From Hyphochytrium catenoides (Eukaryota; Protista; Hyphochytriomycota), in assembly GCA_900088475.1 (NCBI GenBank), contig FLMG01000261.1:145493-209492 (forward strand): DNA of 64,000 nt, given 5' to 3'. The translations under genes and the position numbers were made by a program. Positions 1 through 41,598 of this stretch are shown here, in pieces (the first letter of the stretch is position 1; every line of letters starts with the position of its first letter). The notes under the pieces are model-generated. The model did no database searches, was not told where the DNA came from, and saw only the letters and a program-made list of their open reading frames with translations.

Positions 1-143
1 GTCGCCCTTTACTCTAAAACATGAAGTTGCCAAATCTTACCCTTGAATTAAAGAGCTTTTCCTTTGATATATTCTTTCAACCTCATGCACCTCATCTCTG
101 GCTCCTATCGGTCCGTCCGTATATTCGTCTCTGTTCAAGACAG

Positions 144-3100
144 CTCAGCACTATCCAACATATTGAACTCTTGCTATCCAGGAAATCAACAAAAGGCACC
201 GGAAGAAGAAGAAGACGAACGCTTTTGCTTCCCTTCCATCCCCAAGCGCGCGCGGGGTCCAAGCGGTGATATATTAGAGCGAGAAGCAAAGAAGAGAGAT
301 GGATCCCGACTAAATGAGTTCAAAGGAAGAGGACGGAAATGTATGGACACACACTATTGTTATCTCATTCTCTGAACCTAAATGCCCTTGCCACAGCGTC
401 ATCTCTGAGAGGAGTGGAAGGGACAGGCCGAGAGAATAGATCGTCCTTCCCTTTTGGCACTTCCCCCGCAATTACCTTTACCAAGGCGGGGACTGGGCGT
501 TTGCCATGTTCACCTGGAGACGAAACAGGTGACGAAACTTTGTCGTTACGTACCTTTACTCCTTTTGCGACGGGTTCCCCATGCCTTACTCGCCCATCTT
601 CCCATTAACTTTCTGCTGTAGTGGACCCAGACCTTATTCCAGAACTTGAGGGAGTCGTCCTCACTTCCATCCAGCCTGGAATCTACAAGATCACAAGTCA
701 AAAGACCCGGCTAGCTCATTTCGGTCAGCTTGCTCCTATTACCCGGCGCCCTCCCTCTTCTCTTCTCTCTAACCGCAGTTGACTGTCTTTCCTCGGATAT
801 CTCTGCTCCCTTGCACTCTCGTATCAGGAATAACTTGGAACATCGAAACCTGTGCTTCTGAGATCAGGAGATCGTTGGCAGAAGGAACTCATCCGCATCA
901 GAGGCTTATGGCGGAAGTCGAGAGGGAGGGTCTTCATTCAATAGTGATAGAAGTTATACAGGTTTACTTAGCGTGGGACTTCATCAAGTCCACTACGAAC
1001 TCCTTACTCCTCTTAGTCCTATATGGTCCTTCTTTTTTCTCCTTGTCTCCGTGGCTAATCACTCTTCTTTCATCCTTTGTGGGCATTACCTTTCTACTCG
1101 TCACCCAGCTTCCGTTGCAGAGGTATTACCCAGTTACGTCGTTCGCCTTCGTCATTAAGACACCAGTGCTCTTGTTGCTTTCAGGCCGTTAGAGTCCCGT
1201 TCAACTTTGACTTCAGACAAACAGAAACATTGCTTCAGCGAAAGCTCTCACAGTTCCAGTATCAGCATGCTCTTAAGTTGTTTGTTTGTGTCAATTCGGT
1301 CTATAAGAGGAATAAAACCAAGGTGACTGACGTTCGTTCGCATTTGCCCATCAATATCCTGAACCTTTGATTTGCCTGACGGATTGATGGTCTCGTGGTT
1401 GCTTCTTGGCTTACTTCAAGCCTGTTCACTACGCCACTAGCAATTTTACATCTGAAATAGTTTTGCGATTTACCACCCTCTTGGTCTCCCTTGAGTCTTA
1501 TATATTCCATAAGGCTCTCTGACCTGTTACCTGATGACATCCCCTCTCAGCCTGCGTTGTCTTCCTGGAGGACCAGAGTGCATTATCAAAAAGAAGCAGA
1601 GTTAGATGCTGCAGTAATCCACATCCAGGTGCCCCCAAGCCCAAGAATTTTACACACGACGCCCTCTCGTGTTCGGATTATCAATCTTTCTAATGTTCGC
1701 TCTTCCTCTTTGGTGACTGTTTAAGACAATCTTCCATGATTTGTAGGTTTATCATCTTGCGTCTCTATTCCGTCGCGTATTGATCTAGACACCATTGACT
1801 ACGTCTTCTGTGGCCATGTCTTCATTGCTTTCAGTGTGAAGATGTTTGTATAGCTCGTAGACTCTACTGTATCTGCCTAATCTTGGACTGAAATGGATCG
1901 CGTGTTGTGGCAGTCCTTCTGGCGAGGTATAATTCATTCTCGCTTGGCGAGGGAAAGAAAGAAAGAATGGGCGGTCCGTCTCATCCAGAGGTTCTTTAGA
2001 GGTTATCGAACGCGCTGCTTTTACAACGAAGTCAGAGGATGGACTAAACGCATCCGCGCTGCCACTCATATACAGAGGGTCTACAGAGGCTTTTTAGATA
2101 GACGATTAGGTAAACTGTAACCCAGCTTTTGTGGGACGATCCGTCGTCGTCTTCATCGCTATGCTCATTGTCTCACGTTGTAGAAGCCGCTTTGTCCCTC
2201 TTTATCATCGACCTACATAGCTAACAGTTTTCGTGCCTATCTGTCTTGCATCTCTCTCCACGCCTCGTCTTATATACCTCCTGCGATTCCAGTGCGACCA
2301 CCATGTCGCCTCGGCCTTCATCCCATCTTGTTTATCATCTCCTCCACCAAAGCGTTTTGGTTGATTGCTTGCCCTGCTGAGTTTCCCTTTGTACCCTAGC
2401 CACCAGGTTCCGTCGATATTATACCCACAGAAAGGCTGCCATCACTATTCAAAGCGTCGGAAGAGGCTTCTTAGTGAGGTGGAGAAGGAAGAGACATCAA
2501 GAATCTGTGAAGAAGGAAGCGGCGGCTCTGGAAATTGGGAGGATCTGGAGAGGCCACAGAGCTAGGTCTTTTGTGAAGAATATCAGACGGCTTGAGGGAA
2601 GAAAGGTCAGAAAGAAAGGGACCTGGAAATGCTTGAATGAACACCCGACGTAGGACGCGTTTGATGCCCCAGCCAGGAAGAAATTTCCCATATCTCTGTT
2701 CCCTATACAGAACTTAAGATCTTGACCAATCCTACTATTGCAATGTGGACTTCCATCTGCTCTGAAAATCATGCACTTCTTTGTGATCTCCTTTACCCTC
2801 ATCCTCAGGCATTCTTATTCCTTCCTTTGCTCTTTCATCACCTTTCTTCAAAGTGTCATTATTACGCGACTTCCCCTGGCTCAATTATAACGTCTGTCCT
2901 CTGGTCCTCTTTCTCCACTGTCCCGCCTCCAGTTGATGGTTCTCGCTGCTGCCCGCTGCATATGGAAGAATTATAAGATCTATAGAAGCAAGCGGTTCTT
3001 GTCAGTGATCTACATGGCGCTGGCGCTAAGAGGAAGAGTTAGAATGATTTGGCACTGGTGGAGGAGGCGGAAAGGAGTCAAGGCTCTGGAAGATAGAATA

Positions 3101-28648: not shown

Positions 28649-31600
28649 TCATCTCCCTGCAGCACTGGCTGCCCTTTCTGCTGCCGCCATCATAGCGGCC
28701 GAGAGATTTCTTAGCAAAGCGCGAGTGGTTAGGGAGAGAGAAGCTAGTAGAGATGCAGTCCAGCTTGCTCTTGTTAGCTGAGAACGGGTGGCAAGCTTCA
28801 CTCGTTGATTCTTGAGATCTTTGTTTTGAGCTCCGCTTTCCCTGCTGGCACCTGCTTCATCTTCTCGCTTCACCCTCTCTCTCTCCTCTTCGTCTCGCTT
28901 CATCTTCTCTCGGTACTGTGCCGCTGCTGCCTGGACTTCCGCCTCTGTGTCATTGAAGTCTATTGCACCGGGTATTTTGAACGGCCTTGACGGTTCCCTA
29001 TGTAAAACATATTCGCACATGCTGCGAAGGTCGTTCCTACCACCCAATGGATCTGTTGGGCATAGCGTGGAGGAAACCAGAGGAGCAACCTCAGCAGGAT
29101 ACAAGAAAGAAAGAGCTCAATCGACCACGACCAAGGCTTATGACGATAAAAGGGGCTGTATTGTGGACATATAGGAAACACTGCTTAGCGAGAAAGGATA
29201 ATCGTCTGCAAGACCGTGTTGAGATCAAAGAGAGCATCTTTGGTACCTCTTTCCACCTCCTGGCACAAATCTTGGTACTGCTCCTTGAGGGCGCAAATCT
29301 CACACGCAGCCGTCTTCGTACAGAGAGGACATGAAGAAATAGTCTCGCAGTCCTTGTACTTCTTGTATGGCCTGGAAAGGGAATGGTGAGAAACACCCAA
29401 GGACCTCGTAAGAAGACAGGAGGAAACTAAGGCTTCTCATGGTCAGGTATCAATTGTTGGCAAGAAGATGACAATTAGAGAGTAAACATCAGGCATTCCT
29501 ACATACAATGGTCCGCAAGACGGGCACGTGTTAAAGATAGGGTTGAATTAGAAAAGGAAAGGAGAGCGACGAGCAGGAGTTGGCTAAAACGGGGACGAGA
29601 AGTTCAAGGGCCATCAAAGTAAAGTCGCGTCTGCATGTGTGATCCCCAGAGGTCCACTTACTGCTCATAGCAGCTCAACTGGCGAAGTACTTTCATTGCA
29701 TCCGCATCTGCTTTGACGGCACTGACGTAGCTGCTTTCCAACTCACTGCGGTATCAGCTTCAGTACACTCTGTCTGATTGAATCCTTCCATCTCTGCTTG
29801 CTCTCTCCCTGACCGGTGAAATCCAACTTCTACCTCAATATCTTTGTGGCTCCTAAAGTGCTCCGTATCTTGTATGTCATTCTTTCACTCTTCGCTAACC
29901 CTTCACACTCACCTCAATCTATTTTCTGGCCGGACGGTAACCATCGTTGTTCCCTCGCCACAGTGGACGTGCTTCACCTTTCCTACGCCTTCGTCTGCAG
30001 CTGAGGTGCCCAGCACTTCCACCTGACCCAGGTGCAGATATTCAATCTATGCGCAGCACAAATAGCAAAGAAATGTAATAAGACACTAAGCGGACGAGCG
30101 GAAGGCTGGTGATGTTGATGATAGAGGTTAGGAAGAAAATGGTCAGGGGTAGTGCTGTTCAATATGTCCTCTCCATCATCCCCAAAGTCTCTCGGTTGCT
30201 CATAGCCTTTGTGCGTTCCACCTATTCAATTGTCGAGAGGGCGCTACCTTGTCCACAACTATTGAGATGTATCGTCCATAGCTTCGAGCGGGAAGATCCC
30301 ACCTGTGAGGTTAGGGTGACCCATTTATGTCACATATAGGACACAAGTTAGAAAAAGACAAGAAGCGTGTCAGCCGAGTCTCTACCTAGATGAGAGTGAC
30401 TGTAGCGTTACGGAGCATGCTAGGATGGGAGGCCGGAAATCCGACCAGGACTAAGACGGGCCGTAAACAGAGGAACATACGTGAGACTGCTTCTAACAGA
30501 CTGACACAATTTGATCCAAGGACACATAAGATAGAAAGGAGGTAGTGATGAAAGAAGCATGAAAGAAGACAGAAGAAGACAAAGGCATCCATCGGCTGGT
30601 CGAAGCTGCCGAGGAAGGCCGACCAGATATCACCTGAGAACCATACCGCCTGACTTGAACTTTGTGTAGGTAACAGATGTCGATATTGTCGCGTCAAGAG
30701 GACTACGACCGCCTTTAGATTGCAAATATGTGCCAGATTGCCGGAGAGAAGGAGCCCAGGAGGTGTCAGAACAGAGTTGAGAGCAACTTCAAACGAGAGG
30801 AAAGAAGAAGGGCAGAGGAAGGCACAGCTCCAGTGACTCGCCAGCAGAGTCTTGAAACACGTGGCACTGCATGCTATGAAGTGAGGAGGCGCGTCCATAA
30901 TATTATTCCTAGCTAATGCTAACCTTTCTCTGTGGTTAGAGGAGGCTTCTTTTCCGAAAGAAGTACATAACAAGGGAATAGTCTCGACTGATACTCATCC
31001 TCCTTCAACGACTTGTCAAACGGCTTGTCCGTGCGGTTACATATTCTAACGCTGTAGACGTGGGAGAGAGTCCCAAGATCCACCTTGAGGGCAAAAAGAC
31101 ACGGAGAGACAACCGGGTGGAGCATACAAGCAAGATACAGTGAGATAATACGGGAGGTGGGACGAGTCTGACAAGAGAGGAATAACAACGAAGGCCCTGA
31201 TTCTTACGATCCGCCTATAAGACCCCTATTCCCAGAGTGTAAAGCTGTCTTTAGAGTCAAGAAAGAGTAAAGAGGTTTAAGAAGCATGGAGAAAGGCTAA
31301 AAGGTCGTCGTATCTTGTCCCTCAACAATGGGCACTGAAGAGATGTAGTACGCGCAGAAACTGGGGTTGACTTTAACTTTATCATGGAGGCGGACTCGAG
31401 GAAGGAATGACGAGTAGCGGAGCACTGAGAAGAGTAACAATTCTGTCTCACCTGCCACCACGGTCGGTCATCTCGCTGGGCACGTTATGAGTCCAAGAAC
31501 AGAAGATAGTGATTGAGTCAACGGGAATCAGTCAGTAGCAAATACAATACAGTGACGGAGTAGAATAAAGTGGTACGACGTAGTAGGGAGGCGACCTGAA

Positions 31601-34600
31601 GCGAGAGATGAGAAATCAGTCCTTCACCTGTGTATGGGTGCAATTCTCCTCGCCGTAGCAGTTGAGATTCCCGTCATTGGCGTACAATGCCTTTCAGGAT
31701 GCAGGTGGAAAGTGTCAGGAACAACATGGAACATCGCATGCGGACGAGACGAACTAGGGAACAATAGACGCTGCGCTATTAACTATCCTTAAGTCACATA
31801 TAATGAACAGAGGATGAAAACATTCTTGGCCAAAGAGAGCTCTAGCCGTACTTCTCTCTTGTTATAGACCGAGCTCTGATACGCCGGGCGACGGAGCGCA
31901 ATGTTCGCTGGGGAAATGTGCAGGCATCTCACCAAACGCGGAAAAGGGATAAAACGCTCGGCGAGAGGATGTCCGCAACAGCTTAAGAAAGTATTAGTGT
32001 ACGTTGCGTTAAAAGGAGAGACGCTCTGACACAGAGGGAGATGGAAAGACGCCAACTCATGGTAGAGAGATACCAGCAAATACAAATTGGAAGAAGGAAA
32101 CGACTTGTAGAAGTACAAGAGAAGGAGGACAAGGGTGAGAAGAAAGAGATAGGGAGGAAGTAGCCTGGGCGTTTACCCATTATCGTTTGTTCCCCACGTG
32201 TACAGCTCACCCTCTTGAGTGAGGACGGCGGTGTGACTGGTCCCACAGCTTACTTGAGTCCCACACTGTTGAGAAAAAATGTAGATAGGTAGAGGTCGAT
32301 TGAGCAAAGAGTGGAGGTTACTAAGAGTGAACAGTGACAAGACAGAAAGAAAATTATATTGCTTCTTCCATGGAAGAAGCTATGGAAGCGTTGGAAAGAG
32401 ACAGAGAGAGAAAAGGAAGAGATGAGCTAGCCCAAGGCGACCCGATCCACATAAGGTGTCAAGTGCCCTTTCCTTACCTTCCCCAGTTTGGATAAAATCG
32501 CTATCTCCGTGAATACAGGGCAGAAGACACCTACAGCACCAGGAAGGTAACTATGTTAGAGCAAGACAGCCTTGAATGCTAGGCTAGATCTACGCAATCC
32601 ATTCAAGCTAACATGAAGAGGTCAGGAACAGCAGCGGCCCGCTAAAAAGAGAACAACTATGGCTAGTTTTTTACAGTATCGGCATGATCGATACACAAAG
32701 ATGGATGACAAGTGCAGACATCAGCTCCCTCGTGCTTGAGACAACCTAGAGCTTGTGCAGTCCCTGCCACGTAAACCTTTCCTCCGACGAACACCTCATC
32801 ATCGTTGGCGTTACTTCTGTCTCTTCTTCCTCCGTTCGTTTGTCCTTCTTTCCTTTCAACCACCGTCACGACTGCCGAATGATAGCCACCACAAGAAACC
32901 TTAAAATTGAGAGGTGGCCACAAAGTGATGACCGGAGAGAGTGCGCGTGAAGGATTGAGTTGATGAGTAAGAGAGAGTCAGAGAGAGAACTTGAGTGAGT
33001 GGTGAGTGGAGGAAGTGAGGGAAGAGGTGCATAGGAGACAACGTAGTGGGCGTCTACACTCTTAAGACAAACAACAGGATAAGCTACTGTTTAAGATAGG
33101 GAAGAGGAAGATGACTGGAGGGTTTGCGAGGGCCCACCTGCCACACTCTTTCATGAGTCAACCCTTGAACTAGAGTCGGCCTGAATAGAGTTCTAGAACG
33201 ACCCTGGGAGGGGAGAAGAAGGCTCTCTTTCCTCTTGTCGTCGTCACCGAGGCCCAACCTGCCGCCATCGTTACTACCCCATACCCAGAGCTGACCAGTG
33301 ATCGAGACGGCAGCTGAGTGAGAGAACCCGCAGGAGACCTACTGCGACGGGAGGACGTAACACCGTTGTTGGTCAAGATATTCTTTATCGTTTTCAGCAT
33401 TGAGATAAGCGATGGCCAAATAGGTCCGGCACATACGGCAGGTAGAAAACCGCATGATAAGAAAGGACGAAGCGGATTCCTGAAAGGACCTAGAAGAGGA
33501 CTGCAGTCTCACAGTGAACAGGTCAAGAAAAACGGGAGAAGGATGAAAAATTCTCCCTTCACTTCCTTATACAAGTATTGGCTTGCCTGTCTTATCTTGA
33601 CTATCTCCGAGAAAGCGATTGGAAGAGGTTGGGAAGTGAACCATTCGTCGACTCCTTCTTCTTCCTCTCCTTCAACTTTGCCTTCATCTACCATCGTTCT
33701 GTCAAGACCATGAGCCCAAGGATCTACCCCTAGCTTTCCGCCTCCTCCTGACCCCCAGGCATAGAGTGTGCCATCAAAGGTCACGGCTGCACTATGAGAG
33801 TGGCCTAATGAAGAGCAACGGAGAGTGATGGCCATGAATTGGTGGGCGCTATCGTGAGACAAAGGAGAAGGTTGAGTCAAGAGATGTGAAGAGAAAATAA
33901 CGAGAACAAGAGCAAAAAAGGAAAGACCAAGGGCATGACAGAAAAAAGCGACTTGAAGTCAACAAGCGCAGAGGAAAGACGCTCTCTGCTGACCGCAATC
34001 AACTTGGGCTATCCTTTCTCGCGCAAAAGCTCTTATCTTCTCGGGTCTTCCTCTATCAAGACCTGCAGTACTCTCCTCTCCATGGCCCAGACGGCCAACA
34101 AGACCTAGACCCCAAGAGTACACTTGACTAGAACCACAGGTCAGAATGGCACAAGCAACAACGATGCAGAAAAAGCAACAACGATGCAGAAAAAGGTGGG
34201 GAGAGAGGGGGAAAGCAGGCAGAGAGGAGGCAAGTAACGATAGAACGACGTCACTAGAAACTGGCCTACGTGTCAAATAGTTGCCTGATTTGGGGGATAG
34301 TAGACTGAGGGACGGTTTGAGACGTTAGACAAGGAGTCTCCGAGGGGGACACACATACCCTGAACGATGTAAAGCACACGCGTGGTACGAACCCACAGCT
34401 ACCTGTAGAGCAAGTGCGGAGAATCAACAAAATAAGAGATAGTGAAGGGAAGGAAAGCAAGAAGAAGCAAAACATACACGTTGTAGAAGGAAGGACAGTT
34501 CTCATAGCACCGCCGTCGTAGTAGCTAGATGAAAAAAGGTAATAGCCACTCCCCTAAAGCAAGGCCCAATGCAGGAGGACAGGTGAGGCCAAGCCTTCAG

Positions 34601-37600
34601 AGCATCTTCCTCGGTGGCACCTGAACAATGCTGCTGCTTCCCGACATGTGTTTGATAGCAGAGCCTCTCGGGGTAATTCCACTCGTGTCAACAGAAACCT
34701 CCCTCTTCTGTTTCTCTCGCCCTTTCTCGGTCCCGTCTTTGCTGGTACTATTGTTATTGCTGGGCATATCCTATACGGTAAGAAGGTAATAGAACAGTTT
34801 CCGCTCGATCAGAAGAAGCAAGGCAAACCAGCACACAGAGGCAGCAAAAGCGGGTGCTAGAAAGAAGAGAAAGCCTAGTCTAAGGCAGTGTGGTTTGACA
34901 CTGAGAGACAAGATTGACGGAAGGGCGAAAGGCACATTAGTGAACGCCAGATTCTGGCAGGACAAGGGACAAGCGATGCGAGTGGCGAGTCATCTGCAGT
35001 TTTTACCTCTCTCTTTATCTTTTTCTCTCTTTGTTGCCTCTTGAAGTCCGCTTCGACCTGCTTCAAGGCCTGAAGTCTTTCCTGCTGTTTTTGTAGCTTT
35101 TCCTCTTCGAGGTTAAGAACTATGAGTCAAAAAATGCTGTCCGCTCTTTCACCTCCCTCAAGACTCGACTATCCTCTGAGCATTCCTTATTGGCGCTTCA
35201 TTCTTCTCCTTGTCTTTGTCTCTGCTCCTGCTCCTGCGCTCTCCCTCTCGTTCTTCTTCTCCTATTCGCTTCTTCCCTGCCCTGTACCACTACTGAGGAC
35301 CCCTTTCTTCAAGGATAGGACGATTACTGCTAGTCTTTCCTGCTGTACGTCCCCAAAGGCTACTCTATTGTTTGCTCATTTCCTTTTTTATAGCCGTGAC
35401 TGACCTAGGAACTCTGCGTGCTTCTGCCTCGACAGCTCCCCCCAGTATTTCATGAAGAACTTCCGGTGCCTAAGGAAAGGAGAGGAGAATGAAGGAGAAA
35501 GAAGGACATCTGTACAAAGACAAACTGGTGGACGATCATCCCTTCATGGCCCCGAAGAAAAGCGTGAAAATAAGGAGAGGTGAAGGAGGGAACTTTTAAG
35601 ACCATAGAGAAGCGATAGGGAGGATCGCATAGAGTCACTACGAATGGTAAGACCGGAAAGCCGGTCTTTTTGCTTCGATTCCTCGGCTTACCCCTCCCTG
35701 TCATCCTTTAGGTGCTGCTGTCTTCTCTCCTTGATGCCTTTCTCTCTCTCCTTGAACTCCTTATGCAATTCTGGGCCTAGGAAATCTAGCTCAAGGGCGA
35801 AGAGATCCTCAAGAAGCTGCAGAAGGAAGAGACGGGACTTGGAGCGGCAGTCGAAGCCGCGCATCTGAAGTAGAAGAAGAACCTCTTGGTCAGCGAGCCA
35901 ACTAATGCCCAAACTGCAATGTAAGGTTAAGAAGAATAAAAACGTGGCTTTGTGAAGAGAGGGAGTCGTAGCGATAGAAAGGAGAGTAGACAGAAGAGCA
36001 GCATTAAAATGTTACCATTGCCGAGAGATTGAGGTCATCCTTGGTTATGAGCGGGTAGAATTTGTTCTTAACGTAGTCCTCCATCGAGAAAGAGCGTTGT
36101 CTTTGCTGGGCTAAAGACGGACTTTCCCACTTATCATAGTACTCAGCCACGGTTCGAGACCTGGAGACCGGAGAATCCCGGGGAGAAGAGGTGTAGCACG
36201 AACGGTTACACAGCTGTCCCGGGATGAGATGTCTACTATTTCTTGGCTATTGATGGCCACTTGGTGGAAAAGAGATAGAATTCATGGCCCTAGAGCGGAC
36301 AGCGGAAAGATTGGACGGAGGCAGCGTGACAGAGGGAGTAGAGCTCTGATAACACGGACTGAATAGAGAAAGAGGAGAAGAGATGGAGATATTGATGTGC
36401 TTACTTGGAGGCTGGCGCCTTGCTGGATGCCATGCTGAAGGCACTCCCCAGCCTTCTGAGGCTTAGGGCGCTTCCCACCCTTCCTTCTTCCTCCACCTCT
36501 TCATCTTTCTCCTTTTCCTCATGAGCAGCCAATGCAAATGAGCGACCTCCGCTAGATCCTCCTCTTTCTCCGGCCTCCCCAACGGCGCCTCTTGGCATCA
36601 TCTTCATCAGTCTAGAGCGCTCCGTCAGTGGACCTCCTTCCCCTACAATTTCACGGGACGCTGAGCAGACGGGAGCACAGTGAGAGATAGTGTGGGCAGA
36701 AGGGGAGAATAGGAGACGGCGTCGCAAACATGGGTGGGGAAAGGTGAGAGAGAAACGCTTTATCAGGATGATAAGAAAGGACAGATATCAGGGTTTGTTC
36801 ACCCAAACACAAAGCAAGGTTCACTCTTCGCTTTGCCCTTCTCCATTCTCACTTGGACCGGTTTTCAATCTCTCTCCACCCAGATCTCTCTCCTCATGTT
36901 ATATGACATCACCTTCTACTTCAGTTCCTCTCCTCACTAGATTTTCTCTTCTCTCTACTATTTTTTTTTCTCTAGTCTACTACAAAGTCGTCATACCTGG
37001 GCGCAGGAACTTTAGCTTCCTCTTTGCTGACTGCATGTCCTCCTGATGGGCAGTGTCAGCGGTCCCCGGCCGCTCTCCAATGTTGACCTTCCCCTTTTCT
37101 TCACGTTTTCCTTTTCTCTTCTGAAACCCTTCCTCCATTGCCTCTATAATTTGCTCTTCCCAGTGGTGCTTCTCTCGCCCTCCCCAAGAGTAAAGTTCTC
37201 CCAGGGATGAGAGGGCGTAGGCCACTCTCCTTCCCCCTCTGACCTCTCTGATCCCTTGGCCCCATAGCCACACGCTGTGGGTTGCTACCGCCAGACCAGC
37301 AAAAGCCCTATATCGCGGGTCTACTTCTAAAATTTCTGCCAGATGCTCCTCTTCTTCCTCTCTCCTCCTGCGAAGTTCCTCTTCCTCTTTCTCTCCTCTA
37401 CGTCGCTTTTCTTCCCTTTCTAGCTCATACTTCCTCTGTTTCTTTGCAAAGAAGCGCTCGGCAGTGACGCTGCCTCTCTTAATGACATCCGAGAGTTCCC
37501 CCACTTTCTCTTTTCCAACCGTCTTTGCTTCTGCCATTACCGTTCGAGCTTTGAGTTGAGCCTTTTGTGCTTCATACTCTGCAAGGGAGAATTGACATGT

Positions 37601-40600
37601 CATCGTTAGTCAGAAAAGGAAAGGAAACAAATAAAGGACAGTGGCGACGATAGATTTTAGGGGGATCCATAGGAGCAGATCACTGAGGAGAGAGCGCATC
37701 TTCAAGCTCCAAATGTCAGAAAAGGAGCGGCTGCGAGGGGTAAAGAAGGGAGGTTGAAGAAGAGTAGGAAAAAGGAAGAGAGCAACCAGATAAAAGTCAA
37801 GGAGAGGAGACGCTCACAAGAAGCACACGAAAGAGAAGAATAACGAGGCATCGCAATCGATGATTCTTCAGTGGCTACCTATCTTGTCCCCGTAGCTTTG
37901 GAAGCGAAGAGGACCACGTGACCGAAAAGACGCCATCTGCCGAAGTTGAGCCAAAGGACTCGACACATTTTCTCTGCCTCCAGGCGGGTTTATAATCTAG
38001 GGTTCACCCAGTCAGAGGTATCGCATTCATCTTTACTGTTCCTCATCAACCTTTCCTTCTCTTCTTGCTCCGTTCCTGCGATTCTCTCCTCACTTCTCTT
38101 CTGTTCTCTTCTGGTTAACTTTCTCTTATTTCTTATTTCGGTCTCTCCTTTTACTGATAGAGTGTGCTCTAGCCGCTTAAGCTTCGCGTTATTCCTTTTC
38201 TCGCCTTATAACAGTACTGCGTGCTCTCCTCTCAAGTCACCTTGTTCTGGCTTCTCTCAACAAGGACGCGGCTTTCTCCCTCCTCTTACCTCACCCATCG
38301 CGTGCTGCACTGCTTGACTCCCCTGATCGTCGGGCTGCGCCTGAGCTTTAGCCGATGAGATCGTGGTCCTATCTTCCTCTCTATGAAGCTCTTCTAGCGT
38401 CGGAAGAGCAACACGCTTGTCCCAAAGGTACTTCAGACGCTGTGAGCCGTACAGATCGGGACGGTCCCGGGGCTGAAGAGGACGATCAAGACAGCACGAA
38501 GTTCCGTTGGATCTCATTAAAAGAGGTTTTGACCAGATGTTCAAGAAATGATAGCGAAGAAGGAGGACTAGATGAGAGGCAGCGTAGGATGGAAAGCGAA
38601 GGCGGACGGACAAGAGTGGCTCCATTTACCGGGCCAATGAACTGATTATCTGTGCCATAGCCAAACACATAGACTTGTCCTCCCGCGTCCATAGCATTGT
38701 ACAGCTCCTTCTGCAGAAACAAAGAAGAGATTCAAGACAATGGCGGACCGAATGGTGAGATAAAGGACAAACTAGAGAAAGAGCGGAGAGAACAGAGGAG
38801 GAAGGGCGAGACAGAGAAAGAGAGAGAAAGAGACGCACAGAGAGAGAGGTAGAGAGAGCGGGATTGAAAAAAGGTTGGTTTGCACGGATCTAGAGGACGC
38901 TGGAGATGATTATCTCACCTCTGCTCTCGTCAGCGCGGCTTTGATATACTGCAAGCGACGCTGCCTAACAGAGCAAACTGAGAAGTAGATATTGAACATG
39001 ATAGGGATAGTTCACCTGGGAGAGAAGAAGAAGAGAGCGAAGGAGGAGACAAAGAGGGAGAAGAGGAGAGAAAAGAGGAAGAGAGGAGACGACAGAAAAC
39101 AGAGAGAGAGGACGAGCGGCCCGGCAGAAACATAGGGACGAGCGAATAGAATAGCAGTAGAGAAATAAAGGATGTAAGGGCCGAGTTAGCTGCGGAGTCT
39201 ATCACCTCTCCTCGTGCCAGTTGGTGAGCCATTTCGCTTCCTGCAACGCCTTGTCCTCTTCTTCATGCTCCACGTCAAGCGCCTCCTGCAAGAGCTGTAC
39301 AAGCCTTTCGTGCGGAGTAAAGCGAGAGAAGGCGATATCCCGCTTCTTCAGCTCTTCAGGAACGTTTGTGAGCTAGAGGAGGCAGAAGAGTAGCATCTTG
39401 GTTGTAAGCGGAAAGGAGAGGTAATGTACTAGTACTAAGAGCTCATCTGACGTTCCCTCTCTGTATCATCTCTTTCTTTCACACTTCTTCCTTCTTCTTT
39501 CAACGAACTCTCTCTCGTCTTTGGTCTGCTAATCAAGGGTCTCTTCATACCTGCAGCCAAAGCTTCTGAAAGCTTTTGAAGTTGATGTATCCAGTGCCGT
39601 CCTAAGCAATGAGCAACATCAGTCAGTCAGTAGACAAGAGAATGTTAAAGGTAGTGGGATGAAAGTAGAGGAAACAGAAACTCCACCAAGGAGGGAAAGC
39701 TAGAGAGAAAGAGGCAATATGGGGAGAGGTGTGGAGATAACGCAGTAGAAGAGAAGGTGAAGAAGAATAGCGGATGGAGACTTAGTGTGGGAAGCACAAT
39801 CGATAGAATTCCTGCTTTGGTATGGTTCATATGACGTAAGTGAAGAGAGCAAGATAGAGAGAGAGGGAGGGAGAGAAAGGAGAGAACGAACAAAATAGAG
39901 TTAGATATCCGTACCGGATCGTAGCGATTGAACAGCTCTTCCTGCTGTTCGTCACTCACTTTGAGCCCAAGGCCCTCAAGCACCTCTGATGAGATATACA
40001 ATAAGAGTTAGCACGAGAGCATAAGTAACATGGAGGAACAGGACCAAGGGACTTTGTTCTATCTTTGCTGATTGAGTGACGAATGCCAATAGCTCTCCTT
40101 CTTTTCGCTCTTCCTCCTCATGGCTGAGACTCCCTCCTGTTAATCCCACCCTCACATTTTCCTGCAGCGACTCTCTCTCTCTCCTAGTATTCCGTTGATT
40201 TTAGCACGTGGTCACTTCAGCTCACCTGCAAACTCATCTTCGTCCAGCCTTCCACTGCCGTCTCTGTCATACATATCAAAGGCATCTTTAGGATGAATGA
40301 GCTTGTTCGGACTGAAGCCTAAGATGTGATCTGGGTCCTGTGGGTCTGTCGTGTACAGCGCAACACGGAACTCTGCAAAGTCAATTTGCCCTGGGGAGAG
40401 AGCGAGCCAGGAGGCAAGAGAGAGAAAGTTGTCATGGGAAAGACCTTGGTGGAGAAGAGTAGGGTCAAGGAGAGGAGACAGCAAAGAGACAAAAGATTGA
40501 AGTAGAGCTACGAATGGAGAGAGAGACAAAGAGCAATGAGTGAGGGGGAGTGAGAGAGGGGAAGCAAGAGAGCGGTAAACCCAGGAGAGAGCTCGAGGGA

Positions 40601-41598
40601 GACACGGATGATCCATTTCAGTGTACCATCGTTGTTCTGGTCGCACTGCCTAAAGTATTTGAACATCTTTGGCTCCGCAAGCTCGATGCCGAAAGCAAAT
40701 AGTAGCTGCTTGAACTCATCGTAGGAGATGCGGCCGCTCTTGTCAACGTTGAAGTGAGAGAAGAGCTGTGGACGGACAGCAGAGACGGTCAGGAGGCGCA
40801 GAAGAGAGACAAGAACAAAAGACGTGTAGCAAAAAATAAAAAGGATAGAGCGTTTCTCAAGAACATCGCGATAGATTACGTCCCCCTGAGGAGGAGGAAT
40901 GAAGACTAGCAACGACGCCAACAAGGTACCGTGTTGCAAGAACGGAGTGAGAGCAGAAAAGAGAGAGCGTAGTCATCTTTTCGAAAGATATGTGTTTGGA
41001 GGGAGCAGATGAATGGGATTACCTCGTGAGCAGAGAACTGACTATAGTCTGTCCTTTTCTTCTTAGAACCAACTGAGAGGTCTCCGCTGTCTTGCCGTCT
41101 TGCTCTTTCTAGCTCCAGGAGCTCAGGGGGAAGTACTTTCTCAACGGAGAACTCAGGCTTCTTTTTTCTCTTCTTATTCTTCCTTGTCTTCACCTTTCGC
41201 CCGCCCTCCTCAAGCTCCTCCTCCTCCTCCTCTTCTTGTTCATCTTCTCGTCCTTTTTCATCTTTTTCTGGGCTTTCCAGAGCTTTCTCAGCCTTGTCAT
41301 TGCCCTTATCTTCCACTTTCGCTGCCTATTAATGGCCAGTAGCAAGAAATCAGAAAAATCCATGAATTAGGCGGACAGAGAGGAATAGAGACGAAAAAGA
41401 AAGGGAAGGAAAGGGCTTGAACAAAGGTTCCAAGACAGGCAGACAGCGGGGAGGAGGCCGGGGCATTGGCATGAAAGGACATATAGGTTAGAGGCAGCAG
41501 GCTGCAGAAGTAGGGACGGAGCTACTTAAGGAGACAGAGAAACACTGAGCGGTCCTCGAGGTTCTGGAGGCGTTCTCAACCTTCAATATAAAGTTCAT
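28649..41598 (-). CDS. EF-hand + RCC1-repeat protein with inserted F-type lectin (FTP/F5_F8-type C) domain and C-terminal CxxC-x4-CxxC motif; multi-exon
   Basis: Probable 18-nt first exon MNFILK (41581-41598). Four EF-hands: NVDKSGRISYDE, DQNNDGQIDFAE, DRDGSGRLDEDE, DPDGTGYINFKS. RCC1 blades: GQVYVFGYG, GELYSWGG, VYSWGLGLVGRLGHG, GTLYAWGSGGGGKLG, VSCGFSHSAAV, VSCGGYHSAVV, VSCGTSHTAVLTQEGELYTWG. Lectin domain NIALRRPAYQSS...ANDGN...CTHT...PWWQVDLG...NRTD...GRY...VEV. CPLC-x4-CEIC near the C-terminus; TGA at 28649-28651. Confidence 0.88.
34153..34195. repeat. 20-nt tandem duplication in an intron
   Basis: aagcaacaacgatgcagaaa x2. Confidence 0.95.

What the first reader, a model, noticed from the sequence alone, without database searches (positions are those of the whole stretch)
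30010..31910. F-type (fucose-binding) lectin domain with an exact HX26RXDX4K motif inserted into an RCC1 propeller of an apparently cytosolic EF-hand protein
Seen: seven exons join to NIALRRPAYQSSVYNKRE-ALYANDGNLNCYGEENCTHTQ-RDDRPWWQ-VDLGTLSHVYSVRICNRTDKPFDK...SRLFP...GRYISIV...LHLGQVEVLG. Exactly 26 residues lie between the His of CTHT and the Arg of NRTD, followed by x-D-x4-K. Established: HX26RXDX4R/K is the fucose-binding signature of F-type lectins, and the DG element (here ANDGN) is their Ca2+ site; the characterised members are mostly secreted or surface proteins. Seen: the domain sits between an RCC1 ...FPRLV linker and the next VKHVHCG...T strand, so it is inserted within the repeat series. 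The protein starts with a charged N-terminus and has no evident signal peptide or TM helix. Inference: an intracellular, Ca2+-modulated fucose or O-fucose reader, possibly recognising nucleocytoplasmic O-fucosylation of the SPINDLY type known in plants and some protists. The third ligand could instead be the Arg of SRLFP after a loop insertion.
Basis: partly seen in the sequence, partly recalled or inferred. Interest (0 to 1): 0.75.

Follow-up and report, generated by a model that had tools for sequence, protein, structure and literature searches.

The report
Lectin domain inside a cytosolic propeller protein
A water-mould-like protist has a calcium-sensing protein, evidently kept inside the cell, whose propeller domain carries a real but remodelled fucose-lectin domain; the family is widespread in related organisms, unstudied, and its sugar binding is unproven.

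Summary
On the minus strand, seven GT-AG exons with consistent phases (31981-29913) encode a true F-type lectin domain (FTLD). It lies inside a large EF-hand plus RCC1 gene (about 41598-28650).

- **Family membership.** No run on record as RNA was listed, so the exon model rests on a gap-free match to orthologues. A profile of 20 orthologues hits only solved F-type lectins strongly (3cqo E 1e-26, 1k12 E 1e-13). The 11 best fold matches of an orthologue model are all F-type lectins.
- **Insertion.** In a model of the Chrysophaeum orthologue, complete RCC1 propellers align from residue 14 to 840 (HERC2 RLD2, Z 44.6). This spans the FTLD at 656-821, so the domain is a true insertion before the closing strands.
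- **Location.** More than 20 orthologues show no signal peptide or membrane helix, and the FTLD disulfide cysteines are gone.
- **Correction to the motif.** The "exact" H-x26-R-x-D-x4-K is partly coincidence. The family has a 10-residue insertion after NRTD, and the Lys lies inside it. The invariant Arg of SRLFP is the true third basic residue.
- **His conservation.** His is kept in about a third of family sequences, including two oomycetes, and is Ser or Cys elsewhere.
- **SPINDLY link.** No SPINDLY orthologue was detected.

Fucose binding is possible but untested. The scan noted a paralogue elsewhere in this genome.

The parts
28652..41598 (-). Approximate span of the whole multi-exon gene: EF-hands, RCC1 propeller with inserted helical region and inserted FTLD, and a Cys-rich C-terminal region. 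The start (ATG at 41598, MNFILK, spliced to 41325) and the 3' end are inferred.
   Evidence: tblastn of the full-length orthologue P0015 (1439 aa) is colinear from 40768 down to 29197. The start was read from the sequence.
40627..40765 (-). EF-hand exon (FNVDKSGRISYDEF loop)
   Evidence: Pfam EF-hand_1, E 7.8e-10, 38 bits, above cut-off
40226..40390 (-). EF-hand exon (end of one EF-hand, then the YDRDGSGRLDEDEF loop)
   Evidence: Pfam EF-hand_1, E 2.3e-9. 56% identical to P0015 137-189.
38606..38707 (-). First propeller strand (GGQVYVFGYG). In the orthologue model its equivalent belongs to the same propeller as the two strands that follow the FTLD.
   Evidence: tblastn to P0015 304-337. The equivalent strand E16-21 of the P0035 model lies inside the RCC1 superposition 14..840.
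37160..37285 (-). Second propeller blade (LGELYSWGG)
   Evidence: tblastn to P0015 410-449. Weak Pfam RCC1-like match.
32176..34144 (-). Several exons encoding RCC1 blades 3-7
   Evidence: Pfam RCC1 / RCC1_2 above cut-off for exons 33980-34132, 33749-33850, 33132-33338 and 32176-32268
31852..31981 (-). Exon B: end of the last RCC1 repeat (CCGHP...FPRLV), a linker, and the first FTLD strand (NIALRRPAYQSSVYNKRE)
   Evidence: Splice sites read. 43.8 bits to the family HMM and a match to positions 5-23 of the bacterial FTLD HMM.
31628..31690 (-). Exon C: cation-site element ANDGN and CTHTQ. The His codon is at 31636-31634.
   Evidence: Aligns to 'AvDGn...vtHT' of canonical FTLDs.
31452..31475 (-). 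Exon D: 24-nt microexon RDDRPWWQ
   Evidence: AG/GT flanks, phase 0. Fills exactly the 8 columns between TQ and VDLG in the orthologues.
30924..31083 (-). Exon E: VDLG...CNRTD, then the 10-residue insertion, then SRLFPCYVLLS. Arg of NR at 31035-31033, Lys at 31014-31012, Arg of RLFP at 30984-30982.
   Evidence: 56.3 bits to the family HMM. The bacterial FTLD HMM aligns it with a 10-residue insert, placing the RL Arg on the canonical third Arg. Single copy in the genome plus one weak paralogue.
30634..30712 (-). Exon E2: middle strands of the FTLD (GRSPLDATISTSVTYTKFKSGGMVL)
   Evidence: Needed to restore the phase between E (phase 1) and F. Its length matches the orthologues. Weak on its own: 1.8 bits to the family HMM and no significant match to the bacterial FTLD HMM.
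30248..30302 (-). Exon F: WDLPARSYGRYISIVVDK (the GRY strand)
29987..30046 (-). Exon G, first part: last FTLD strand (IEYLHLGQVEVLG) and a short linker
   Evidence: Aligns to 'LsLAEVqV' of canonical FTLDs.
29913..29986 (-). Exon G, second part: VGKVKHVHCGEGTTMVTVRPENRL, the two strands that close the propeller
   Evidence: Aligns to P0035 1058-1076. In the model these are strands E825-830 and E834-839 and lie inside the RCC1 superposition.
29197..29747 (-). Two exons of the conserved C-terminal region: SYVSAVKADADAMKVLRQ (29747-29667), and YKKY...CPLC...CEIC (29388-29197)
   Evidence: tblastn to five or six orthologues. No Pfam family.

Best explanation
The stretch encodes a genuine but remodelled F-type lectin domain. 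It lies in the loop between the last blade of a seven-bladed RCC1-like propeller and the two strands that close the propeller. The host protein is a large intracellular protein with N-terminal EF-hands, a long helical insertion and a Cys-rich tail.

The protein belongs to an uncharacterised family found across stramenopiles: brown algae, pelagophytes, oomycetes, and this probable hyphochytrid.

Compared with canonical FTLDs, the domain has lost all three disulfides and has gained a conserved, acidic 10-residue insertion in the loop after NRTD. The basic triad is present at the homologous positions: His of CTHT, Arg of NRTD and Arg of SRLFP. The Lys that completes the textbook motif sits inside the insertion and is incidental.

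Inferred mechanism. The propeller with its EF-hands acts as a Ca2+-responsive scaffold or exchange-factor-like platform, and the FTLD is its ligand-recognition head. In lineages that keep His (this organism, oomycetes and others), the pocket may still take a fucose-like sugar with an axial hydroxyl. I give that about 0.3. In lineages with Ser or Cys the ligand must differ or binding is lost, so the function the family shares is probably not classical fucose recognition.

Shown: domain identity, insertion topology (in an orthologue model), residue homology, the conservation pattern, and the absence of secretion signals in orthologues. Inferred: the Ca2+ response, the scaffold role, and any ligand.
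For: Domain identity:
- The profile of 20 orthologues against PDB hits FBP32 3cqo (1.1e-26), lectinolysin 4gwi/3le0 (about 1e-19), SpX 2j1r (4.9e-16) and eel agglutinin 1k12 (1.1e-13). The next hit is at 0.038.
- The Foldseek top 11 for the orthologue FTLD model are all F-type lectins, at E 6e-12 to 2e-10. Then comes a gap to CBM32 at 4e-7.
- The window's exons map in order onto a canonical bacterial FTLD HMM.

Insertion:
- In the P0035:236-1100 model (pLDDT 77), HERC2 RLD2 aligns with Z 44.6, rmsd 2.2, 338 residues, model range 14..840.
- The FTLD at 656..821 aligns to 3le0 with Z 18.0, rmsd 2.2, 138 of 142 residues.
- The closing strands have pLDDT about 42 when folded without the propeller and about 90 with it.

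Triad homology:
- MAFFT and the HMM place a 10-residue insert after NRTD and put the RL Arg on the canonical Arg.
- The RL Arg and the NR Arg are invariant in 20 orthologues.

Family and location:
- Orthologues are named from Chrysophaeum, Ectocarpus, Discosporangium, Sphacelaria, Phytophthora, Pythium, Aphanomyces and Aureococcus.
- Orthologue N-termini are acidic or hydrophilic and have no 19-residue hydrophobic stretch typical of a membrane helix.
- EF-hand and RCC1 exons pass Pfam cut-offs.

Fucose supply: a GDP-mannose 4,6-dehydratase gene is present, so GDP-fucose can probably be made.
Against: - No transcript evidence exists for this gene model.
- The structural evidence comes from orthologues, not from the window's own joined protein, which was not folded.
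The loop could occlude the site or tie up the Arg residues in salt bridges.
- The window's copy departs from residues that are invariant in the 20 orthologues: WNR is CNR, and GRYVRIQLE is GRYISIVVD.
- The cation site is only partly canonical: ANDGN, with Asn for Ser49 and Gln for Glu147.
- His is replaced in about two thirds of family sequences.
Confidence: 0.72

Rival explanations
1. The domain is an active, Ca2+-modulated intracellular fucose or O-fucose reader that recognises SPINDLY-type nucleocytoplasmic O-fucosylation.
For: - His, Arg and Arg are all present at homologous positions in this copy, and also in the oomycete orthologues from Phytophthora and Pythium.
- The tree suggests His is ancestral and kept along several deep branches.
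- A GDP-fucose synthesis gene is present.
- The protein is intracellular by all sequence signs.
- Stramenopile GT41 enzymes form an 'intermediate' clan of unknown sugar specificity (PMC10027727), so O-fucosylation there is not excluded.
Against: - His is lost in 50 of 73 family sequences.
- The vicinal Cys-Cys that contacts fucose in the eel lectin (PMC5712786) is replaced by Lys-Pro plus a 10-residue insertion.
- No SPY orthologue was detected. Of the three GT41 loci, one is OGT-like, and in the other two only one exon each was tested against the PDB.
- The two O-fucose papers I read never use the word 'reader'.
Confidence: 0.12
2. The FTLD has been taken over as a non-sugar interaction or purely structural module (protein, lipid or metal binding through the conserved acidic insertion). 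The His in this copy is a relic.
For: - The most conserved family-specific feature is the inserted loop, D-E-P-x-D...D-x-F, with an invariant Asp and a near-invariant Pro. The His is not among the conserved positions.
- Ser, Cys, Ala, Leu and Met occur at the His position.
- The review notes FTLDs that are 'coopted' or have lost sugar recognition (PMC5712786).
- Related folds such as APC10/DOC appear among the distant structural neighbours.
Against: The two Arg and the Asp of the sugar site are invariant across the family. His is retained in several deep lineages rather than lost at random.
Confidence: 0.4
3. Artefact. The exons are not a real expressed gene (a pseudogene or chance open frames), or the microexon is wrong.
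For: - No sequencing run on record as RNA was listed.
- Exons E2, D and F score weakly on their own.
- This copy deviates at several residues that are invariant in the 20 orthologues.
Against: - The tblastn segments and modelled exons stay open with consistent GT-AG phases, and are colinear with a 1439-aa orthologue over about 12 kb.
- The junctions leave no gap in the alignment.
- Related members come from transcript-derived collections (MMETSP, Tara).
Confidence: 0.04

Closest known systems
Canonical F-type lectin domains with solved structures: eel agglutinin 1K12, striped bass FBP32 3CQO, lectinolysin 3LE0, S. pneumoniae SpX 2J1R
   Same: - Same fold and clear sequence homology.
- Shares NxALxxxAxQSS, DG, (C)THT, PWWxVDL, NRxD, RL and GRY...EVEV.
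- Same His-x26-Arg spacing.
   Different: - Intracellular host protein, and embedded in another domain.
- All disulfides lost: Cys82-Cys83 become Lys-Pro, and Cys146 becomes Gly.
- A 10-residue acidic insertion precedes the third Arg.
- Glu147 becomes Gln and Ser49 becomes Asn at the cation site.
- No binding data.
Bacterial tandem FTLD proteins annotated 'discoidin domain-containing protein'
   Same: These are the closest non-eukaryotic sequence relatives, at 30-37% identity. They share WWEVDLG...WNRTD...RL..F.V.VS..PF...GRYVRIQL...LAEVQV.
   Different: In the 17 of 25 checked that carry the motif, it is the strict H-x26-R-x-D-CC-xx-R form without the insertion. They are multi-domain, and presumably secreted or surface proteins. 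In the tree they form a separate clade from the eukaryotic family, split with 100/100 support.
Uncharacterised stramenopile RCC1-FTLD proteins: Chrysophaeum taylorii CTAYLR_001943, Phytophthora palmivora 'Regulator of chromosome condensation (RCC1)', and Pythium insidiosum P43SY_004752 (whose UniRef name begins 'Fucolectin tachylectin-4 pentraxi...', truncated in the output)
   Same: Orthologous family with the same order of parts, the same loop insertion and an invariant RL(F/V)P. The two oomycete members with a clean His call (Phytophthora, Pythium) also keep His.
   Different: - About 45-50% identity over the domain.
- This copy has CNR instead of WNR and GRYISIV instead of GRYVRIQ.
- The Lys that mimics the textbook motif is present here and in only some members.
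- I found no experimental study of any member.
HERC2 and RPGR RCC1-like domains
   Same: These are the best structural matches for the propeller (Z 43-45). HERC2 also combines RCC1-like domains with a galactose-binding-like beta-sandwich, the DOC domain (from general knowledge).
   Different: In those proteins the sandwich is a separate domain, not an insertion within the propeller. It is a DOC domain, not an F-type lectin domain.

Membership tests
F-type lectin domain (FTLD / FTP, SMART SM00607) | Sequence homology to the family across the whole domain | tested here: met
   - The orthologue profile hits only F-type lectins strongly in PDB.
- Six of the window's seven exons map in order onto a canonical FTLD HMM; exon E scores 18.9 bits and E2 gives no significant match.
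- Pfam PF22633 is above cut-off in orthologues.
- The SMART FTP model itself was not available.
F-type lectin domain (FTLD / FTP, SMART SM00607) | F-type beta-barrel jellyroll fold | tested here: met
   Tested on orthologue models, not on the window's own joined protein. TM 0.75-0.86 by target for single-domain lectins (0.42 for the two-domain 3cqo). Z 18, rmsd 2.2 Å over 138 of 142 residues against 3le0.
F-type lectin domain (FTLD / FTP, SMART SM00607) | His of the basic triad (eel lectin His52) | tested here: met
   CTHTQ, codon 31636-31634, aligned to the His of canonical FTLDs. Across the family it is His in only 23 of 73 sequences.
F-type lectin domain (FTLD / FTP, SMART SM00607) | Arg-x-Asp (Arg79, Asp81), 26 residues after the His | tested here: met
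   NRTD. The spacing of 26 was counted exon by exon. The Arg is invariant in the family.
F-type lectin domain (FTLD / FTP, SMART SM00607) | Third basic residue four residues after the Asp (Arg86) | tested here: inconclusive
   A Lys is at the literal position, but it lies inside a 10-residue insertion. The homologous residue is the Arg of SRLFP, ten residues further on. Whether either one reaches the pocket needs coordinates.
F-type lectin domain (FTLD / FTP, SMART SM00607) | Vicinal Cys82-Cys83 disulfide packing on the fucose ring (frequent, not universal) | tested here: not met
   Replaced by Lys-Pro here and by Glu/Ile/Ser-Pro in most orthologues. The review notes other FTLDs that lack it.
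F-type lectin domain (FTLD / FTP, SMART SM00607) | Cation motif h-h-D-G-x | tested here: inconclusive
   ANDGN: the Asp, the Gly and the final Asn fit, but the second 'small hydrophobic' residue is Asn. The Glu147 equivalent is Gln and the Ser49 equivalent is Asn.
F-type lectin domain (FTLD / FTP, SMART SM00607) | Binds L-fucose or fucosylated glycans | not testable with these tools
   No docking or coordinates were available. This needs a binding assay.
RCC1-like seven-bladed propeller | Seven RCC1 repeats closing into one propeller | tested here: met
   RCC1 / RCC1_2 Pfam hits on the window's exons. The orthologue model aligns to complete RCC1-like domains at Z 37-45 over the range 14..840.
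EF-hand calcium-binding proteins | Canonical 12-residue Ca2+ loop with flanking helices | tested here: met
   Two exons pass EF-hand_1 cut-offs at 38.0 and 36.6 bits. Ca2+ binding itself was not tested.
SPINDLY-type O-fucose system (as the proposed partner) | A SPY-clan GT41 enzyme in the same genome | tested here: not met
   PF13844 finds three loci. C3288 is OGT-like (448 against 130 bits). For C499 and C1683, one exon each was tested; both best match OGT/XcOGT and SPY is not hit. This is weak negative evidence because the search works exon by exon, and an intermediate clan exists in stramenopiles.

The most novel reading that the evidence does not exclude
In the His-bearing lineages (this organism and the oomycetes), the domain is the first endogenous cytosolic reader of fucose or O-fucose. 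It would link a glycan or sugar signal to Ca2+ and to an RCC1-type GTPase platform. The sugar might be written by the 'intermediate' stramenopile GT41 enzymes, whose specificity is unknown.
Probability: 0.1. Interest if true: 0.85.

Novelty: new variant of a known kind. Interest (0 to 1): 0.5.

Why it matters
F-type lectins are treated in the reviews I read as secreted or surface fucose binders of animals and bacteria. Here there is a cysteine-free version built into the propeller of an intracellular EF-hand protein, conserved across brown algae, pelagophytes, oomycetes and this pseudofungus.

If the His-bearing members bind sugar, they would be a starting point for finding readers of nucleocytoplasmic glycosylation in protists, including plant- and animal-pathogenic oomycetes. 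If they do not, the family is a clear case of a lectin fold turned to another use, with a natural His / Ser / Cys series for testing what the pocket does.

The work also corrects a trap. A literal match to the textbook motif can arise from a loop insertion while the homologous residue lies elsewhere.

Databases already flag the domain in at least one orthologue. The gain is therefore the architecture and the residue analysis, not the discovery of a new fold.

Tried and rejected
- **Pfam on the five longest FTLD exons singly:** no hits. They are too short.
- **Exon E alone against PDB:** only a spurious spike-protein match at E 1.6.
- **Pfam PF22633 on the whole genome:** other loci are hit but not this one. 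The exon-by-exon search misses it.
- **RNA evidence:** no run on record as RNA was listed.
- **The best phmmer hit, P0001:** a fish cadherin fragment with repeated short matches, hence spurious.
- **Literature:** no paper holds both 'F-type lectin' and 'RCC1'. The search adding 'EF-hand' gave nothing relevant. The Bishnoi 2015 survey is not in the library; only its summary in PMC5712786 was read.
- **My first regex for the key residues:** matched nothing and was replaced.
- **Assigning the window's copy to a subfamily:** summed per-exon BLAST scores show it about equally distant from all, at 45-50% identity.
- **Atlas feature search:** one bacterial 'putative lipoprotein' cluster with RCC1_2 plus F5_F8_type_C at score 0.84, below the level the tool calls reliable. 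It stays a lead only.
- **SPY search:** see the membership table.
- **Secreted isoform:** considered and rejected for lack of any signal peptide in the orthologues. It cannot be excluded without transcripts.
- **DOC/APC10 or CBM32 identity:** considered and rejected because those score far below F-type lectins.

Full report
**What is in the sequence.**
- The finding lies on the minus strand.
- Reading the reverse strand gives seven exons, all with AG/GT borders: B 31981-31852, C 31690-31628, D 31475-31452 (24 nt), E 31083-30924, E2 30712-30634, F 30302-30248 and G 30046-29913. The phases fit (0, 0, 0, 1, 2, 0, 2).
- Counted exon by exon, 26 residues separate the His of CTHT (31636-31634) from the Arg of NRTD (31035-31033). 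T-D-KPFD-K follows.
- No sequencing run on record as RNA was listed, so splicing rests on homology.
- Single exons gave nothing in Pfam.

**The gene and its family.**
- A phmmer search with exon E against 1.8 billion representatives found a family of metagenomic protist proteins. A cluster look-up gave a full-length member, P0015, of 1439 aa.
- tblastn of P0015 on the window is colinear from about 40768 to 29197. The order is EF-hands, an isolated first propeller strand, a second blade, a long helical region, five RCC1 blades, the lectin domain, two more strands, then a conserved region with CxxC...CxxC.
- The window's EF-hand and RCC1 exons pass Pfam cut-offs.
- Word searches added named orthologues: Chrysophaeum taylorii CTAYLR_001943, Ectocarpus, Discosporangium, Sphacelaria, Phytophthora palmivora, Pythium insidiosum (UniRef name beginning 'Fucolectin tachylectin-4 pentraxi...'), Aphanomyces stellatus and Aureococcus.
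- The family is therefore widespread in stramenopiles and already flagged automatically, but I found no paper on it. The review PMC5712786 says only that diatoms, brown algae and Phytophthora have FTLDs joined to other domains.
- The assembly statistics (61 Mb, 4759 contigs) fit Hyphochytrium catenoides (4758 scaffolds; PMC5795050). This is a circumstantial identification.

**Is it an F-type lectin domain?** Yes.
- A profile of 20 orthologues (A2) hits 3cqo at 1.1e-26, 4gwi/3le0 at about 1e-19, 2j1r at 4.9e-16 and 1k12 at 1.1e-13. The next hit, a CBM32-type module, is at 0.038.
- An AlphaFold model of the His-bearing orthologue P0045 (pLDDT 76.5, above 85 in the core) has F-type lectins as its 11 best Foldseek matches, followed by a gap of four orders of magnitude.
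- Six of the window's own exons map in order onto an HMM built from canonical bacterial FTLDs; E2 gives no significant match.
- All seven tile the orthologue alignment without gaps at the junctions.

**Is it inserted in the propeller?** Yes, in the orthologue model.
- P0035:236-1100 was folded with 13 sequences (pLDDT 77.2).
- VIA-align places complete RCC1-like domains on model residues 14 to 840-843: HERC2 RLD2 at Z 44.6, rmsd 2.2, 338 residues, and RCC1 1a12 at Z 37.8. The FTLD occupies 656-821 (3le0: Z 18.0, rmsd 2.2, 138 of 142 residues).
- The two strands after the FTLD have pLDDT near 42 when folded without the propeller and near 90 with it.
- The window's VKHVHCGEGTTMVTV aligns with these strands.

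**The motif.**
- 17 of the 25 bacterial relatives checked carry a strict H-x26-R-x-D-C-C-x-x-R-L. The reviews print 'HX24', but their own residue numbers (His52, Arg79) give 26.
- Against the bacterial domains, both MAFFT and the HMM place a 10-residue insertion in the eukaryotic family directly after NRTD. The window's Lys lies in that insertion.
- The Arg of SRLFP (30984-30982) falls on the canonical third Arg and is invariant, as is the Arg of NR.
- The literal x4 position is K or R in 34 of 73 family sequences, so a 'perfect' motif is unremarkable.
- The His position reads S 28, H 23, C 18, A 2, L 1, M 1 (the set has some near-duplicates). Phytophthora and Pythium keep His; the Aphanomyces call is unreliable (IREHWQ, not CxHT). 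Brown algae have Cys and Chrysophaeum has Ser.
- In a tree with bacterial domains as the other clade (split 100/100), His-bearing members sit on several deep branches. This fits an ancestral His lost at least three times (the root is at the midpoint only).

**Other site features.**
- The disulfide cysteines named in the review (Cys50-Cys146, Cys82-Cys83) are not paired here: Cys146 is Gly and Cys82-Cys83 are Lys-Pro.
- The cation ligands are Asp38 = Asp, Ser49 = Asn and Glu147 = Gln.
- The window's copy also departs from residues invariant in the 20 orthologues: CNR for WNR, and GRYISIVVD for GRYVRIQLE.

**Location.** More than 20 orthologue N-termini are acidic or hydrophilic, and none has a membrane-like hydrophobic stretch. 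One begins MGQSSS, a possible myristoylation site. The window's inferred start (MNFILK spliced to a highly charged exon) agrees.

**The SPINDLY idea.**
- The genome has three GT41 loci.
- C3288 is OGT-like (448 bits to human OGT, 130 to SPY).
- For C499 and C1683, one exon each was tested; both best match bacterial or human OGT, and SPY does not appear.
- PMC10027727 reports that stramenopile GT41 enzymes form an intermediate clan with mixed key residues, so the written sugar is unknown.
- A GDP-mannose dehydratase gene is present; its exon scores sum to about 510 bits against a cut-off of 415.

**Verdict.**
It is unproven on sugar binding and unsupported on SPINDLY.
- A paralogue with the same insertion exists at C883. 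The scan noted it separately.

**Left out.** The joined seven-exon protein of the window was never sent to a search or fold tool. Orthologues with database ids stood in for it.

Noticed in passing
G000:C883:17965-18563 (loci L005, L007): A second RCC1-FTLD gene in the same genome. An RCC1 repeat end (GCLGF...PRLV) is followed by NLALGGKASQSSVYN, ANDG, CAHTQ and VYNRTDRPTDP...KRLFPFWILIS. It has the same 10-residue insertion, His is present, and Pro sits at the x4 position. An assembly gap interrupts it. This is probably the scan's finding s1-336210.
   Followed up: partly
window 31452-31475 (-): A 24-nt microexon (RDDRPWWQ) carries the conserved PWW of the lectin fold. An ab initio gene model could easily miss it.
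   Followed up: yes
window 29197-29747 (-): A conserved C-terminal module follows the propeller: AY.RAV.AD..NA.ILRQ, then YDKYGRGE and C..C......CE.C. It is shared by all full-length orthologues and matches no Pfam family. It may be a small zinc-binding element.
   Followed up: partly
window about 35700-37100 (-); P0035 model residues 169-340: A long, mostly helical insertion (one helix is predicted at 60 residues) lies between the second and third propeller blades. The propeller therefore carries two large insertions, not one.
   Followed up: no
G000:C3288:250227-251516; C499:41443-43284; C1683:48453-49503 (L008-L013): There are three GT41 glycosyltransferase loci. One is a clear OGT-type enzyme in a single 592-aa open frame. 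The other two are divergent, intron-rich copies that may belong to the 'intermediate' stramenopile clan described in PMC10027727.
   Followed up: partly
G000:C4030:8482-10466 (L014-L016): A five-exon GDP-mannose 4,6-dehydratase gene. Its exon scores sum to about 510 bits against a cut-off of 415, so the organism can probably make GDP-fucose.
   Followed up: no
G000:C1218:15749-15940, C4108:17804-17938, C121:79375-79518, C3299:47410-47544 (L001-L004): Four further matches to the discoidin-like family PF22633 occur in larger open frames. They may be other lectin-like genes of this genome.
   Followed up: no
ESM Atlas cluster: A bacterial cluster ('putative lipoprotein', 572 aa, 56 members, mostly Pseudomonadota) in which every member carries RCC1_2 plus F5_F8_type_C. 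It hints that the propeller-plus-lectin pairing also exists in bacteria. The score of 0.84 makes it a lead only.
   Followed up: no
Literature (PMC5712786, PMC12221842): Both reviews print the motif as HX24RXDX4(R/K). Their own residue numbers (His52, Arg79) and the motif-bearing canonical bacterial domains retrieved here give 26 intervening residues.
   Followed up: yes
whole assembly G000: 61.0 Mb in 4759 contigs fits the published Hyphochytrium catenoides assembly (4758 scaffolds of at least 1 kb, plus a mitochondrial genome; PMC5795050). That paper's lectin survey did not include F-type lectins.
   Followed up: partly
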